The notes: generated by a model from the letters alone, not told the origin. 64,000 nucleotides of DNA from Phallusia mammillata (GCA_965637545.1 OZ281494.1:15252001-15316000), one strand, 5' to 3'; positions 50,501 through 56,500 are shown, counted from the stretch's first letter. Translations and numbers: made by a program.

Positions 50501-53500
50501 GGTATGTTCGTCGCACGGAATTTCATCGGGTTAATATTTTTGAGGTAGTAATGTTTTTATTGTGGTAATACAATCGTACAGCATTGAAATCACAGGTATT
50601 TGCACAGCAAATGAACGTAGAAAGCGAGTTAGGGTTGGAATACATTGCCATTTAAATTGCAATGCTGTTAAATGTATGAGATGTAATTCCCACGATAACT
50701 ATACAGTGAACCTTGTTTACAATGCTATAGACTTAAATTGTTAACTGCATATTCGGACCAGATTCGAACCCTTACCCTTTCGATCTTTTTGTACTCTTGT
50801 AGTTTGACAATAAACTCTTCTTTCTCAGCTTCGCGAACGAGCATAATATAAGCCGAGGTGTGAGCACGAGCTCGACTCTTTGACTGAGCATAAGCTCTGC
50901 AAATGATTAAGACGAAAATATTACCTAAACCACGTATTTATGGCCACTTAATGCAACAGATATCAATGATACACAAATAGTATATACAGGCTAAAACTAG
51001 TAAAAAAACATTATGTTTTCAACGTTAGTTTTGAATTATAGTTTTAAAAGCTTCAAAAATTCTGCAAAATTCTATAAAAAGTAAACATTTGAATTATTTT
51101 GCACATATATACAGGCTTAAATATAATTGCGTCTGTAGTTTAGTCAAGGTAGCAGAGACAAAAAAACACTTAAATCACCTCTCCTAGTATCTCCAATCTC
51201 ATGAAATGTACAGTATAATAAATTTGTTTTCACATAACCATTTCTTAATACAAAGGAATTTTGCATGTTATCGTGTTCACAAATAAGATACAACCTGTAT
51301 GATCTTGGCACATCAAACCGAACTACCAAGTTGCATTTGGGGATGAATGCGCAATCTTCCAATCCTCCTGTGCAAATCAGCAAGTTCGTCTCGTGACTCC
51401 GAAACTTACGTAACACCTGTTCATTTCAACATTTATGTTATACATTGTCAAAGGGTGTAAGGCAGTAATGTTTTCAATGCTGTTGGAGTGTGTTACCGAA
51501 ATGATACAAAACAATGCTAATTAAGCCGTCACAACACATTGATTGTGGAAATTTCCAGATTATTATAGAAGTGCAGTAGTTTGAAAACAACTAATCAACA
51601 TGTTTTGCCCAGACCCAACAATTTTTCGTCTTTTAACAACAACAACAACATCAAAAACTGTGGACAGCTCCCCAGGCCGTAAGTCGTGATGTAACGTACT
51701 TTTCGACATACATTTGGCTTAAACGGTGAGAATTTGAGTTCATTCACCGACAAGACATGACTTGACTAAGTTTGAACACAATTTAGGCGTCGGTGGCCTA
51801 TAAGAAGGTCAAAAAGGTAAAGAAACATTCATTAAAAAAACAAAAAATGTTAGGTCCTTACGTTTCAAATTAAAATAAAATTACTTAAGTAATTACAAAC
51901 AATGTCAGTAGTTCGCTGCGTGAAAACCGCTTTGCAATCACATTTACCTCTTCCTGTTTATTTTTATCCATAGTAGCCGTGTCGAGGTTTGAAGTGCCAC
52001 CATCCTCTCCTGCTGTGTATATAAGGTGCGAACTGCAAACGTGTTTTAGATCCTTGTCTTCTTTGCAAAGCTCCCGCAAAAGTCGTTGTAACATCATCGC
52101 AATGCACCTGTGTATTTCGTAATGTCAAATGTATTCATATAAATTTCAGAAAACGTAACGCAGTGTTTGTTTATAAGGTACAAACTGGAATTGGGAATAT
52201 AAATAGATGAATAATATGTTAGGCGACACAAATTGATTGCCTGCTGAGCTGAGTACTTAGGAATAGACTGTTAGTAAAATGCATTCAAAAGGGCTGCAAA
52301 TGCAGATGGTCAGAGTGTCTGTCTAGCATTTCATTACCGACAATTGCCTTTTCAAATGAGAAAAACAGGTAACATGTAATATATTAGAAATAGCAGACAT
52401 CTAGTGTATCTAACCAATGTTCCACATGACAACCTAAAACTTACTTTTCTTCAACAAAGATAATCCCACATAAGATGTTATTAAAGGGAGATGAATAACT
52501 CTCTTCCACTTTATTTTCCCTCCCAACATCATCAGCAACATCTTCATCTTCCTCTGCATCAGAGTCTTGCCACCATGACACATAATCTGCTTCAGACCTG
52601 CAAAAAACACAGTCAAGTTGGTTTACAAACAAAAGAGTGACAAAATTCGGGCGCTTTGGGGTGAGCTTTTTGACATTAGTCCGGTTCGAACTTTGAACAT
52701 TCGAACTTGGAGGGTTCATTTTTAGGCTTGAAACTTTGCTAAACAACACAGCTACACTACTACATGACAAACTGCCAGAAGATGATTAGTCAGTTTTATA
52801 CTTCATTTTATTGGTTTATTTTCACACGTGCTAACATTTGTTTTTTATTTGTTTTGGGGGAAATGAACAAGAGTTTTTGAAAACTTCTGCAAGTGAAACA
52901 GTTTTTTGTCAGAGACGCATTACTAAGTGCTAGCAATTGAATTGATAAATAAACAAGCATTTTTACCGGTCATTGTATTTTGGTGATTGTTTTAAGTTGT
53001 CAGACGCAGGTTTGTATTCCTTAAGAACTTGTAGGAGTCGATGGACTTTTGGTGAAACCAACTGCAAAAACGAACATTATTTGTGCACAGAATTTGGGGC
53101 TAAGTTGCCCATTTGTATTGTATCAATTTTGATACTGGATATAAAATGGCTTACATACACCAATGCAAGATTATGTATATGTGTGGGACACAATGTTAAA
53201 AAAAGAAGCAAGCAGGGAAAAGGGTAGCAGGACTTGGGGTGACAACTCAGTTAAATCGAGAGAGGTTAAACAATCACAATAAATACAAACCTATGAATCT
53301 GCTTAAACGTTATAAATGAAATATATAACTTTTTGGTACAATTCACCTGTAGGTCCACTGTCTTTTTGACATCAAATCTTTTGTGACATATTACATAGGC
53401 CATTCTGAGTGTGGTGTGAACGTATTGCAACATTGTCCTTTGCCAAACTAAGCTTCCTGACAGTTCATCATCTTCCAAATCAGCACCAGCTGCTTTTATC

Positions 53501-56500
53501 TGTCGCTCAACAACAGCCAAGACTTTCTGGATTTGCTTTAGAACCATCATCAACAAGCGATGAACACCTGTTTCAAATTTTGATTTGTTTCGCAATTTGG
53601 CATGGCACAAAATAAACATGTTTATTCATTTTTTAAGAATCAAATTAGACAAAGTTAATTTTACCCTATTTAGAAAAACTTTGTCCTGCTATGTTGCTGA
53701 TTTGATTAATAATTTGAAAACACAGTACAATGATGGACTTACACCAAGGACCAAGAACTTCCAAAACTAGTAAAACTTCTTTTAGCAACATCTTGGGCGC
53801 TTGGAGTGGGTCGATATATTCATTATCCATACTTTCAGTTTCCTTAATGAAAAATTCAATTAAAAAAAAAGGTCTGAACTTAATTGGAAATTTTGTTTAA
53901 CAAGTGTAGTAATTGTTGTTGCACACTGCTAGTAGATTTACTTCAAAGTTTATTATTAAACTGTCACTTCAAACAATTTAAAATATTTAGCAACAAAATT
54001 TATAGCTGTACATGATTAGAACAAAATCATTATGTATTTAGTTTAGAAAAAATGTCTGCTCACATCATAGTTGTCTGTTCCATTTTCGACCACCTTAGAA
54101 ATTTTTGTTGTTTGTGGATTGCCAGATATTTCAGAATCTGTTAAATAATTTCCTTCCTTCACTGGATCCAATATGTCAGAGATTTGCCAATATGTTGTGA
54201 CCATTTTAGAAGAGGCTTTCACCTGCAAAATTACCCAGCAACTGTAACTCGTTTGTCCAAATTAAAGCTGCAGTTTTTGATTGAAAAAAATACAACTCTC
54301 CTTTAGAAGGTTGGACAGAATTGGTGCAGCCATTTTTTTAAATGTGTTTTTAATTTAACAAAACGAAAAAAAGCAATAAATACTTTTTACCTGACAACAG
54401 TCCAGCCAATCCAGGGCATTTGTAATAACATGGTGAAGTTGTTGGTTAAGTTCCAAACAATCACCATCTTGGTCCTTGTGTTGATCTGTACTAAGAATTA
54501 TGTTCTCCTTTGGTCGTGACAGAGTGTAGCGATCCAATGCGATAAGGTCAGTGGCAGTTTCAGCCTGAATGCCAATTACATACATTTTAACAATTAATAC
54601 TAACTTTGCATAGCTTGTTAATATACAATGTTAAACAACACTAACTTGTCCTCTTAAACCACACTAAAGAATGCGTTTAATATGGGTTAGTGTCCAATCT
54701 TAAATAAAATCTAGTGTCTAAAAGGGGGGTTCTGAAATGTTTAATAAAGATGATATTACCTAAATTTATTGTTAAAATATCTGAGGGTAAACTTCGGAAA
54801 ATTGCCTACGGGGCAAAAAAGTTTGGTGGGTTTATTTATAAATGCTTATAGCAAGGAATTTAGGGGGTTTAGATTACATTTTTTGATAACTAAGAGACAA
54901 TAACATGTGTTTTTGAGTATTACATAATTAGAGATGTACAGTATGTGATTAATTTCATTTTTATTTACTGTGCAATGAAGTAAAGCTTCCATTTTTTCAA
55001 TGTAGACTTTTAATTTTTCAGCAGAAATATCATCTGTAAGGATCGATGAAGACAATCCCAAAATGTTCGGCGACAACTGACTTTCATCAAGAACCTGTGA
55101 AGCAAATGGAAATGCAAAATTGTTTGCAACTTACACTACACAAATAAACTTAAACAAACTATTTAAGCTTCTAAAGACAACTTAAAACTGTACCTTCATA
55201 ATTTTACAATAGGAATGTGTTTCAGTGCATACTAAATGACATTCATCAAATATTAAGATATCAAGCATTACTGCAAGGGATTCATCAACTAAGAATGCAC
55301 CCACAAGGATTTCTGGCGTCATTAGTACAACCTAAAACAAAAAGTATATGTCAAGTTTGTAGTCTTTCAAAAAAGCAGACAGATGATCACTGTAAAATAG
55401 GTCAAAACAACAACATTAACAAATTTGTTTTGATACTAACCTGATGATTTTGAAACAATGTGTGCCAATCTTCCTGAGATGTTGGATGTTTGTTTTTTGT
55501 GCAAGTACATATTTTCAGGTCGAGGTGGTTTTGTAGCAATTCAAATTGTTCATGAATAAGCGTTTCTAATAAAACAAAACTTTATTTGTAGAGAATACAA
55601 ATTTTTAGAGTACCTCATACCACAAGTCAAAAGATTACAAGATGTTGTGGATGTAAATGATTTGGGTTTAAGAAATGGTGATAGCAACATGTACCAGTCT
55701 GCAGAACATGGCAGTTCCCGACAAGATCTTGCACGTGCAGGACCTACATGTCCCGCGTGCATGACCCATAAGTTCGCGTGCAAGACCAATTTCAGCAGGT
55801 GCAAAGCAACTGCCAGAGGTCAACACAGCCCAATTAAACGCCTTTGGTGCAAAATTTCCGCGTGCAAACCCCAAAAAAATTGGCGTGCAAAAAAATTTGT
55901 TTAAAAAAAATCGCGTGTGCACCTGCCACATTCTGCAGACTGGAACATGTAAGTATCACAGCAGTTTAATTGAGTAAATAGCAACCTTCATTGAGCAGCA
56001 GAACAGCCAAGTTGACATCAGTCTTGAAATCACCCTGGTCAGAATTGACCATCATTTCACGAATAACCAGAGATGAAATAAATCGCTTTCCACTTTCAGT
56101 ATTAAGGCAGACAATTGTATTTCGCTTTAAAGCACATTCCAGCAGCTCAATCTATACAAAACATTTCACACAAATAAAGGACAAGTTGTGCAGTGCATTT
56201 TTAAAAGAACAAAATTATGCAAAATACAAAAACTTAGGATGGAAAAATCAAATGTTTTTAATCAGAAGGCCGCCTTACTAACATTTTAGGCTCTGGAGAT
56301 GGGGTTTATAAGGAACCCCTGCTTGAGAATAAAATGGTCTTAGCCAAAAGGCACATTAAACCGGCAAAAAATTGGAATTAGTATTTAGTCATCGAAATAA
56401 GCTGACAAGATAAATTAAACATATACCTGATAAGGACGAGGTGTAAAAATATTCGTGTGAACGCCGGTATTCCAGGGTCCCCGCACAAACTTCATCATGG

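What the first reader, a model, noticed from the sequence alone, without database searches (positions are those of the whole stretch)
50860..56110. Dicer with degenerate helicase ATPase motifs but intact RNase III centres
Seen: Walker A reads LNTESGKR (56083-56106) against canonical LNTGSGKT. Motif V reads [13 protein letters not shown] against IATSIVEEGVDIP. Motif VI reads QSKSRAR against QSKGRAR. Motif III is LSSS. DECH and all RNase IIIa/b acidic signatures are intact. Established: the GKT/S Thr coordinates Mg-ATP and motif VI contacts nucleotide in SF2/RIG-I-like helicases. ATP-dependent Dicers process long dsRNA, whereas vertebrate Dicer works ATP-independently while keeping its motifs. 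Inference: this Dicer has lost ATP hydrolysis at the sequence level and may be miRNA-specialised, an independent route to ATPase loss in chordates.
Basis: partly seen in the sequence, partly recalled or inferred. Interest (0 to 1): 0.72.

Follow-up and report, generated by a model that had tools for sequence, protein, structure and literature searches.

The report
Ascidian Dicer with dead helicase ATPase
This is the only Dicer gene of the sea squirt Phallusia mammillata; it is expressed and its RNA-cutting centres are intact, but the ATP-burning site of its helicase domain has decayed, as in every other ascidian Dicer on hand, so the closest invertebrate relatives of vertebrates also appear to dice RNA without ATP.

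Summary
The window holds a 36-exon, 2074-aa Dicer gene on the minus strand (56516 to 38565). It is 2068/2074 identical to the deposited Phallusia mammillata Dicer (UniProt A0A6F9DAA9).

- **Motif changes.** Walker A reads TESGKR (canonical TGSGKT), motif V EDCAF (EEGVD), motif VI QSKSRAR (QSKGRAR). RNA-contact motifs Ia, Ib and IVa are also lost. DECH and all four RNase III acidic pairs are intact.
- **Not an artefact.** Two independent DNA runs and two spliced RNA contig sets show no differing base in the motif exons apart from two synonymous variants.
- **No second Dicer** in the 240-Mb genome.
- **Not peculiar to this species.** Ciona, Clavelina and Styela Dicers carry the same or worse decay, with shared derived states. 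The loss therefore dates at least to the ascidian ancestor.
- **Targeted decay.** Hel1 evolves 4.9x faster than in vertebrates, against 2.3-3.3x for other domains. RIG-I-like helicase genes in the same genome keep canonical motifs.
- **Fold retained.** The helicase fold and partner-binding domain are still recognisable.

Best reading: an ATP-independent Dicer whose helicase survives as a scaffold.

"miRNA-specialised" is not supported, because this is the sole Dicer. "Independent of vertebrates" cannot be decided here. I found no paper in the held library that describes this. It is a new member of a known kind (like fly Dicer-1), of moderate interest.

The parts
38565..56516 (-). Complete Dicer gene: 36 coding exons, 2074 aa, ATG at 56516, TAA stop at 38565-38567.
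   Evidence: Spliced mapping of P0155 onto the window gives 2068/2074 identical residues, and all introns are GT..AG. The first 14 exons are confirmed by spliced RNA contigs.
56083..56106 (-). Walker A / motif I, LNTESGKR (canonical LNTGSGKT): first Gly changed to Glu, Mg-coordinating Thr changed to Arg, Lys kept.
   Evidence: No variant in four runs. The Gly position equals fly Dcr-2 G31.
55501..55515 (-). Motif Ib region, KICTC (canonical KVGEY). Motif Ia, LLLNEET (canonical FLVNTVP or FLVNSAN), spans the exon 2/3 joint at 55986-56001 and 55561-55565.
   Evidence: The roles of these motifs as RNA-phosphate contacts are taken from PMC12146746.
55236..55250 (-). Motif II, FDECH, intact in this species. 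Ciona and Styela read DDCH; Clavelina reads DECN.
55044..55061 (-). Motif III, LGLSSS (canonical LGLTAS), a conservative change.
53347..53842 (-). Hel2i / partner-binding domain exons (exons 8-9), still recognisable.
   Evidence: Pfam Dicer_PBD, 46.3 bits at residues 332-384. Helices modelled at pLDDT about 90.
52008..52025 (-). Motif IVa region, LIYTAG (canonical ITGHG), lost.
51339..51377 (-). Motif [14 protein letters not shown] (canonical IATSIVEEGVDIP).
   Evidence: The only variant in this exon is synonymous (51396).
50866..50886 (-). Motif VI, QSKSRAR (canonical QSKGRAR). The Gly-to-Ser change is shared by all ascidians and, convergently, by a wasp Dcr-1.
49331..49901 (-). Dicer dimerisation / DUF283 domain exons.
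   Evidence: PF03368 matches at window 49326-49442 and 49763-49909; these are the only such locus in the genome.
44302..44325 (-). RNase IIIa first acidic pair, ERLEMLGD. The second pair, DKSIADCVE, lies at 41875-41901.
40770..40793 (-). RNase IIIb first acidic pair, QRLEFLGD. The second pair, GDIFES, lies at 39484-39501.

Best explanation
The window carries the single-copy, expressed Dicer gene of the ascidian Phallusia mammillata.

**What is retained.** The PAZ-platform module, both RNase III centres and the C-terminal end are conserved and intact. The helicase domain keeps the three-lobed RIG-I-like fold and a recognisable partner-binding lobe.

**What is lost.** The residues that bind and hydrolyse ATP (motifs I, V, VI) and those that track the RNA backbone (Ia, Ib, IVa) have been replaced.

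**Most likely mechanism (inferred, not assayed).**
- The enzyme cannot hydrolyse ATP or translocate on long double-stranded RNA.
- It cuts substrates in the ATP-independent way, measuring from an end held in the PAZ-platform pocket.
- The helicase acts only as a passive clamp for hairpin loops and a docking site for a dsRNA-binding partner, as in human Dicer and fly Dicer-1.

**Evolutionary reading.** The decay is shared by all ascidian Dicers sampled (Ciona, Clavelina, Styela). It therefore goes back at least to the ascidian ancestor and has continued since under relaxed constraint on Hel1.
For: **Sequence and gene status (shown)**
- Motif states are read directly from the sequence.
- The sequence is verified in independent DNA and spliced RNA runs.
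- The reading frame is complete and the nuclease residues are intact.
- No second Dicer was found with PF03368, PF00636 or a canonical hemichordate Dicer as query.

**Shared decay across ascidians**
- Shared derived states: motif VI Gly to Ser and motif V Val to Ala in all four lineages; motif V Gly to Cys and Walker A Thr to Arg in Phallusia, Clavelina and Ciona.
- Lineage-specific further decay: GK to SK and DECH to DECN in Clavelina; DECH to DDCH in Ciona and Styela; SASAKS in Styela.

**Decay is targeted at Hel1**
- Hel1 path length from the tunicate-vertebrate node is 1.84 against 0.37 substitutions per site (4.9x). Other domains run at 2.3-3.3x.
- 26 of 76 Hel1 columns that are otherwise invariant are changed in at least 3 of 4 tunicates, against 17 of 125 in Hel2i, Hel2 and DUF283 (P = 0.0007).
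- Hel1 has the most replacements between the two Ciona intestinalis forms (13/205 against 22/1047, P = 0.002).

**Control in the same genome.** RIG-I-like genes keep GSGKT, DECH and EEGxD.

**Still constrained as a fold**
- AlphaFold model: pTM 0.69, with Hel1 blocks mostly at pLDDT 80-95.
- Best structural matches are mammalian Dicer and fly Dicer-1 helicases, TM 0.61-0.64.
- Pfam DEAD, Helicase_C and Dicer_PBD all score above their cut-offs.
- Rough pN/pS is 0.27, from 5 synonymous and 5 non-synonymous variants.

**Experimental precedent**
- One substitution at the same Walker A glycine (fly Dcr-2 G31R) cripples ATP hydrolysis, blunt-dsRNA cleavage and siRNA production, yet leaves ATP-independent cleavage of 3'-overhang dsRNA intact (PMC7668257; numbering checked).
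- Human K70A lowers ATP hydrolysis about 400-fold without much effect on pre-miRNA cleavage (PMC11658451).
Against: - No biochemistry exists for any tunicate Dicer; loss of ATPase is inferred from sequence only.
- The Walker A lysine is kept in all four ascidian lineages, and the D-x-C core of motif II is kept too. Residual nucleotide or phosphate binding therefore cannot be excluded.
- Only five ascidian species were available (three orders). There were no salps or larvaceans, so "tunicate-wide" is not shown.
- The sequences of the other ascidians are database gene models that I could not check against reads.
- The polymorphism sample is tiny (10 coding variants).
- The AlphaFold conformation is not evidence of function.
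Confidence: 0.8

Rival explanations
1. One loss, not two. [quoted passage not shown] Ascidian motif decay is the later, visible consequence. Vertebrates kept the motifs for another reason, such as ATP binding, very slow turnover or structure. The mechanism today is the same as in the best explanation; only the history differs from the reader's "independent route".
For: - Both sister lineages lack the activity, vertebrates biochemically and ascidians by sequence, so one event is more parsimonious than two.
- Hel1 is also relatively accelerated in vertebrates. The Hel1 to PAZ path ratio is 0.8, against 0.35-0.53 in a hemichordate and a crinoid.
- The reconstructed deuterostome ancestor already had reduced ATPase activity (PMC10159624).
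Against: - Vertebrates have kept every motif invariant for about 500 million years. That is hard to explain if the site were functionless since before the split.
- Human Dicer is reported to bind ATP with a Kd of about 85 nM and to hydrolyse it slowly.
- My count of vertebrate-stem substitutions shared with tunicates was uninformative: 0 of 7 in Hel1, with most tunicate states saturated.
Confidence: 0.35
2. The site is not dead. The retained Walker A lysine and the DECH box support ATP binding or slow hydrolysis through a non-canonical pocket, used as a conformational switch rather than a motor.
For: - Lys is kept in all four ascidian lineages while its neighbours vary.
- DECH is intact in Phallusia.
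- The G31R mutant of fly Dcr-2 still appears to bind ATP.
Against: - The Mg-coordinating Thr is Arg, or Cys in one Ciona form. That position differs even between the two Ciona forms.
- The P-loop glycines are replaced by Glu, Tyr, Phe or Ala.
- Motif V and the motif VI glycine are gone in all lineages.
- Motif II itself decays in three of the four lineages. A conserved switch would not drift this way.
Confidence: 0.1
3. Artefact or dying gene: an assembly or annotation error, or a pseudogene.
For: None found.
Against: - The same letters appear in two independent DNA studies and in spliced transcripts.
- The 2074-codon frame is uninterrupted and all splice sites are canonical.
- RNase III domains are 94-97% identical to those of Ciona.
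- About 15 runs hold only the exonic share of the stretch. The two of them that were laid proved to be spliced transcripts.
Confidence: 0.01

Closest known systems
Arthropod Dicer-1 (Drosophila Dcr-1; here a wasp Dcr-1, P0025)
   Same: - Full Dicer architecture with intact RNase III centres, but a helicase whose ATPase motifs are degenerate at sequence level. The wasp protein reads KYTEQT, DQCQ and QCKSRAR, including the same motif VI Gly-to-Ser change.
- The helicase fold is kept and serves as clamp and partner-docking site. The fly Dcr-1/Loqs-PB structures are among the best structural matches, TM 0.63.
   Different: - Dcr-1 co-exists with an ATP-dependent Dicer-2 that handles long dsRNA. 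Phallusia has no second Dicer.
- The decay arose separately: the ascidian proteins group with vertebrate Dicer, not with protostome ones.
- The ascidian Walker A lysine is kept; in the wasp Dcr-1 it is Gln.
Vertebrate Dicer (human, mouse)
   Same: - Closest relatives by sequence and predicted structure.
- Single Dicer per genome.
- Dicing does not need ATP (PMC10159624, PMC12146746).
- The acidic insertion in Hel2 is shared.
   Different: - Vertebrates keep every helicase motif invariant. Ascidians have lost I, Ia, Ib, IVa, V and VI.
- Hel1 identity to a hemichordate is 58-59% in vertebrates against 28-36% in ascidians.
Caenorhabditis elegans DCR-1 with the RIG-I-like helicase DRH-1
   Same: A single Dicer whose own helicase contributes little ATPase or translocation. 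RIG-I-like helicases with intact motifs are present in the same genome (for the worm; for Phallusia).
   Different: - The worm Dicer keeps a canonical Walker A; its G36R is an engineered mutant.
- A Dicer-RLR complex is shown for the worm and is pure conjecture for ascidians.
Drosophila Dicer-2 G31R (laboratory mutant)
   Same: The substitution is at the same Walker A glycine that is Glu in Phallusia and Clavelina.
   Different: It is a single engineered or induced change in an otherwise active motor. The ascidian protein carries changes in at least six motifs, fixed in nature.

Membership tests
Metazoan Dicer (Dicer-1 type endoribonuclease) | Two tandem RNase III domains, each with its acidic pairs (E..D and D..E) | tested here: met
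   PF00636 matches at window 44230-44325 and 40605-40793. All four acidic pairs were read in the translation.
Metazoan Dicer (Dicer-1 type endoribonuclease) | PAZ-platform module | tested here: met
   PF02170 match inside the gene, 41.6 bits. The module is 65-77% identical to other ascidian Dicers and 56% to coelacanth.
Metazoan Dicer (Dicer-1 type endoribonuclease) | Dicer dimerisation domain (DUF283) | tested here: met
   PF03368 matches over the cut-off, 39.6 and 29.6 bits; the only such locus in the genome.
Metazoan Dicer (Dicer-1 type endoribonuclease) | N-terminal RIG-I-like helicase fold (Hel1, Hel2i, Hel2) | tested here: met
   Pfam DEAD 40.8, Helicase_C 34.4 and Dicer_PBD 46.3 bits. 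The model has pTM 0.69 and best matches Dicer helicases at E = 4e-36.
Metazoan Dicer (Dicer-1 type endoribonuclease) | Orthology with chordate Dicer | tested here: met
   The ascidian clade is sister to vertebrates with 100% support. The protein is 99.7% identical to the deposited Phallusia mammillata Dicer.
Catalytically active SF2 / RIG-I-like DExH ATPase | Walker A GxGK[ST] | tested here: not met
   Reads ESGKR: the first Gly and the Thr/Ser are replaced.
Catalytically active SF2 / RIG-I-like DExH ATPase | Motif II DExH | tested here: met
   DECH at 55236-55250. It is not kept in Ciona and Styela (DDCH) or Clavelina (DECN).
Catalytically active SF2 / RIG-I-like DExH ATPase | Motif III TAS/SAT | tested here: inconclusive
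   SSS, a conservative change whose effect is unknown.
Catalytically active SF2 / RIG-I-like DExH ATPase | Motif V (T-S-x-x-E-E-G-x-D) | tested here: not met
   Reads TGGLEDCAF: the Gly and the Asp are replaced.
Catalytically active SF2 / RIG-I-like DExH ATPase | Motif VI QxxGRxR | tested here: not met
   Reads QSKSRAR, with Gly changed to Ser in all ascidians. The Gln is also lost in Ciona, Clavelina and Styela.
Catalytically active SF2 / RIG-I-like DExH ATPase | RNA-backbone contact motifs Ia, Ib, IVa | tested here: not met
   NEE, ICTC and IYTAG in place of NTV, VGEY and ITGHG.
Catalytically active SF2 / RIG-I-like DExH ATPase | Measured ATP hydrolysis | not testable with these tools
   Needs recombinant protein.
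miRNA-dedicated Dicer of a two-Dicer system (arthropod Dcr-1 type) | Degenerate helicase ATPase motifs | tested here: met
miRNA-dedicated Dicer of a two-Dicer system (arthropod Dcr-1 type) | A second, ATP-dependent Dicer paralogue in the same genome | tested here: not met
   Searches with PF03368, PF00636 and a canonical hemichordate Dicer found only this gene. The only other matches were a gene with two RNase III domains on C4, presumably Drosha, and RIG-I-like genes on C5.

The most novel reading that the evidence does not exclude
Dicer's helicase stopped working as an ATP-driven motor before tunicates and vertebrates split. The event would then not be tied to vertebrate genome duplications or to interferon, as currently proposed.

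Ascidians show what the site looks like once all constraint on it is gone. The strict conservation of the same motifs in vertebrates would then point to a different, still unknown ATP-linked role there.

A bolder variant: the sole, motor-less ascidian Dicer borrows one of the tandemly expanded RIG-I-like helicases, which keep intact ATPase motifs, to handle long viral dsRNA, as the nematode Dicer borrows DRH-1.
Probability: 0.3. Interest if true: 0.65.

Novelty: new member of a known kind. Interest (0 to 1): 0.45.

Why it matters
Why only some Dicers use ATP, and when the vertebrate lineage lost that ability, is an active question.

- **Gap in that work.** It included a single tunicate, on a very long, misplaced branch, and does not discuss tunicates.
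- **What ascidians add.** Tunicates are the sister group of vertebrates. Their only Dicer has lost not just activity but the motifs themselves. That gives a natural, motif-level knock-out in a chordate with one Dicer.
[quoted passage not shown] It also makes the "one loss or two" question testable with a better-sampled reconstruction.
- **Practical side.** It cautions that long-dsRNA RNAi in ascidian embryos would have to work without a processive Dicer.

The gene itself is ordinary and already deposited; the interest is evolutionary and moderate.

Tried and rejected
- **Exon-level relatives of the Walker A exon:** searched the 5.8-billion-protein collection and found nothing.
- **Further tunicate Dicers (stolidobranchs, salps, larvaceans):** a Styela query returned only the same five ascidian species. 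None of the 150 cluster representatives besides Ciona looked tunicate-like. The depth of the loss within Tunicata stays open.
- **One loss versus two:** I counted vertebrate-stem substitutions shared with tunicates. Only 22 such columns exist and tunicate states are mostly saturated, with 0 of 7 shared in Hel1, so the test is uninformative.
- **dN/dS between species:** not attempted. No coding DNA of the other ascidians was available and protein identity of 37-58% in Hel1/Hel2i means saturation. I used domain-wise protein branch lengths and within-species variants instead.
- **Assembly error, pseudogene and second Dicer:** all rejected.
- **General fast evolution of tunicate genomes as the whole explanation:** rejected. 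The acceleration is concentrated in Hel1, and RIG-I-like helicases of the same genome keep canonical motifs.
- **Literature:** searches for tunicate or Ciona Dicer helicase motifs found no description.
- **Operator rules:** Two large unnamed vertebrate-type Dicer clusters (P0209, P0265) were not used.

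
Full report
**What is there**

The minus strand of the window between 56516 and 38565 carries a complete animal Dicer gene.

- I first read the region and its stop-free stretches.
- I then laid contigs of four public runs on 50750-56600. Two runs, X6 and X7, are spliced transcripts. Their 13 joints all have GT..AG ends on the minus strand and fix the first 14 exons.
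- With those exons the N-terminal 650 residues translate without interruption.
- A search of cluster representatives with the RNase IIIb exon, followed by a named-protein search, identified the protein. It is 99.8% identical over the helicase and 2068/2074 identical over the full length to P0155, the deposited Dicer of the ascidian Phallusia mammillata (UniProt A0A6F9DAA9).
- Mapping P0155 on the window gives 36 coding exons, all introns GT..AG, and a TAA stop at 38565-38567.
- The six residue differences are natural variants. One of them, L150I, is the 55265 variant seen in run X4.

| Motif | Phallusia | Canonical | Window coordinates |
|---|---|---|---|
| I (Walker A) | LNTESGKR | LNTGSGKT | 56083-56106 |
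| II | FDECH | FDECH | 55236-55250 |
| III | LGLSSS | LGLTAS | 55044-55061 |
| V | [13 protein letters not shown] | IATSIVEEGVDIP | 51339-51377 |
| VI | QSKSRAR | QSKGRAR | 50866-50886 |

The motifs that contact the RNA backbone in active Dicer helicases are also gone: Ia NTV to NEE, Ib VGEY to ICTC, IVa ITGHG to IYTAG (motif roles from PMC12146746).
- RNase IIIa ([17 protein letters not shown]) and IIIb ([14 protein letters not shown]) are intact.

**It is real and expressed**

- DNA contigs of two further studies cover exon 2 without a single differing letter: X2 from 2024 with 0 differences over 55920-56600, and X4 from 2018.
- The RNA contigs of X6 and X7 show none either.
- The only variants in the motif V and VI exons are synonymous.
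- About 15 runs from several studies hold just the exonic quarter of the stretch, as transcriptomes would.

**It is the only Dicer**

- The 240-Mb assembly has one locus with the Dicer dimerisation domain.
- RNase III domains occur only here and in one gene on C4 with two such domains, presumably Drosha.
- A canonical hemichordate Dicer used as query finds only this gene, that C4 gene and weak matches to RIG-I-like genes.

**It is an ascidian-wide trait**

The collection holds Dicers of Ciona intestinalis (two forms), C. savignyi (partial), Clavelina lepadiformis and Styela clava. All are degenerate.

| Motif | Phallusia | Clavelina | Ciona | Styela | Canonical |
|---|---|---|---|---|---|
| Walker A | TESGKR | TEYSKR | GDFGKR / GDFGKC | SASAKS | TGSGKT |
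| II | DECH | DECN | DDCH | DDCH | DECH |
| V | EDCAF | EECAS | EDCAY | EEFAD | EEGVD |
| VI | QSKSRAR | ESKSRAR | ESKSRAR | LSKSRVR | QSKGRAR |

- Shared derived states: motif VI Gly to Ser and motif V Val to Ala in all four lineages; Walker A Thr to Arg and motif V Gly to Cys in Phallusia, Clavelina and Ciona. These argue for decay beginning in a common ancestor and continuing separately.
- Six vertebrates, a hemichordate, a crinoid, a nemertean and a sea spider are canonical at these motifs. The ascidian state is therefore derived.
- A wasp Dicer-1 shows comparable, convergent decay, including the same motif VI Gly-to-Ser change.

**The decay is targeted, not just fast tunicate evolution**

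- On a fixed tree, in which ascidians are sister to vertebrates with 100% support, the path from the tunicate-vertebrate node is 1.84 substitutions per site for Hel1 in ascidians against 0.37 in vertebrates. That is 4.9x, while the other domains run at 2.3-3.3x.
- Hel1 is among the slowest domains in a hemichordate and a crinoid (0.21-0.28). In ascidians it is about as fast as the variable Hel2i.
- Of 76 Hel1 columns invariant in outgroups and vertebrates, 26 are changed in at least three of four ascidians, against 17 of 125 in Hel2i, Hel2 and DUF283 (P = 0.0007).
- Between the two Ciona intestinalis forms, Hel1 again has the most replacements (13/205 against 22/1047, P = 0.002). The residue after the Walker A lysine differs between them, Cys against Arg.
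- As a within-genome control, the RIG-I-like helicase genes keep GSGKT, DECH and EEGxD. I found six C-terminal-domain matches in two tandem clusters on C5.

**The domain is not junk**

- An AlphaFold model built on a 24-sequence alignment has pTM 0.69. Hel1, Hel2i and Hel2 are mostly at pLDDT 80-95. The low-confidence parts are the lineage-specific insertions.
- The best structural matches are the helicases of mammalian Dicer (TM 0.61-0.64) and fly Dicer-1 with Loqs-PB (0.63). They fit better than the closed, ATP-engaged states of the ancestral helicase or Dicer-2 (about 0.47).
- Pfam still recognises DEAD, Helicase_C and the Dicer partner-binding domain.
- Within-species variants in the helicase coding sequence are 5 synonymous and 5 non-synonymous, none in a motif, giving a rough pN/pS of 0.27.

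**How it most likely works**

*Established elsewhere*
- In fly Dicer-2, the single change G31R cripples ATP hydrolysis, abolishes cleavage of blunt dsRNA and siRNA production in vivo, and leaves ATP-independent cleavage of 3'-overhang dsRNA intact (PMC7668257).
- Alignment to the solved Dicer-2 chain shows that G31 is the first glycine of GSGKT. This is exactly the residue that is Glu in Phallusia and Clavelina.
- In human Dicer, K70A lowers ATP hydrolysis about 400-fold with little effect on pre-miRNA cleavage (PMC11658451).

*Inferred for Phallusia*
- With at least six motifs altered, the Phallusia helicase cannot act as an ATP-driven translocase.
- The enzyme therefore dices from ends held in the PAZ-platform pocket.
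- The helicase is kept as a clamp and docking surface.

Because this is the only Dicer, "miRNA-specialised" is not warranted. The mode of dicing changed, not necessarily the substrate range.

**History**

- Its tree held one tunicate (Ciona, branch 0.86, grouped with echinoderms). The text does not mention tunicates.
- Tunicates are the sister group of vertebrates. The ascidian data therefore allow either a second, independent and more thorough loss, or a single earlier decline followed by motif decay only in tunicates. I could not separate the two.
- The strict conservation of the motifs in vertebrates speaks for some retained ATP-linked role there, and so rather for separate fates.

**Verdict**

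- The protein is a bona fide, already deposited Dicer.
- The trait, a naturally motif-dead helicase in the sole Dicer of a chordate and shared across ascidians, appears undescribed in the library searched. It is a new instance of a known kind, arthropod Dicer-1.
- Interest is moderate (0.45).

Noticed in passing
window 55678-55959 (intron 2 of Dicer): A short element with 53-nt terminal inverted repeats (75% complementary). Its word depth in DNA runs is several hundred times that of the flanks (about 108,000 against 300 in X2), and many contigs break here. It looks like a very abundant miniature inverted-repeat transposon.
   Followed up: partly
G000 C5:6792665-6830398 and C5:27829388-27873634 (loci L023-L034): Six matches to the RIG-I C-terminal domain in two tandem clusters of three. 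Upstream exons carry canonical GSGKT, DECH and EEGxD helicase motifs. This suggests a small expansion of RIG-I-like receptors in this ascidian. Gene models were not built, and the presence of CARD domains was not checked.
   Followed up: partly
L007:499-3276 (+), = G000 C5:15657943-15660720: A single-exon 925-aa open reading frame encoding a complete Piwi-clade Argonaute: Piwi_N, ArgoL1, PAZ and Piwi, with Piwi at 293 bits. An intronless Piwi gene is unusual in an intron-rich genome and may be a retrogene.
   Followed up: partly
G000 C4:30356470-30361136 (L004, L005): Two RNase III domain matches 4.3 kb apart on one strand, presumably the Drosha gene. Not modelled.
   Followed up: no
window 45146-46070 (exon 25): One 925-nt exon encodes a roughly 300-residue acidic, Ser/Asp/Glu-rich, low-complexity insert between the PAZ connector and RNase IIIa. 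It is much longer than in vertebrates.
   Followed up: no
Ciona intestinalis proteins P0001/P0151 against P0152: The two deposited Ciona intestinalis Dicers differ at the residue after the Walker A lysine (Cys against Arg). They are about 94% identical in Hel1 against 98.8% in RNase III. They are probably the two cryptic species, types A and B.
   Followed up: partly
P0021 (teleost-like Dicer cluster representative, unnamed): This fish-type Dicer reads DDCH instead of DECH in motif II while keeping GSGKT. Some vertebrates may therefore also have started to lose the catalytic glutamate.
   Followed up: no
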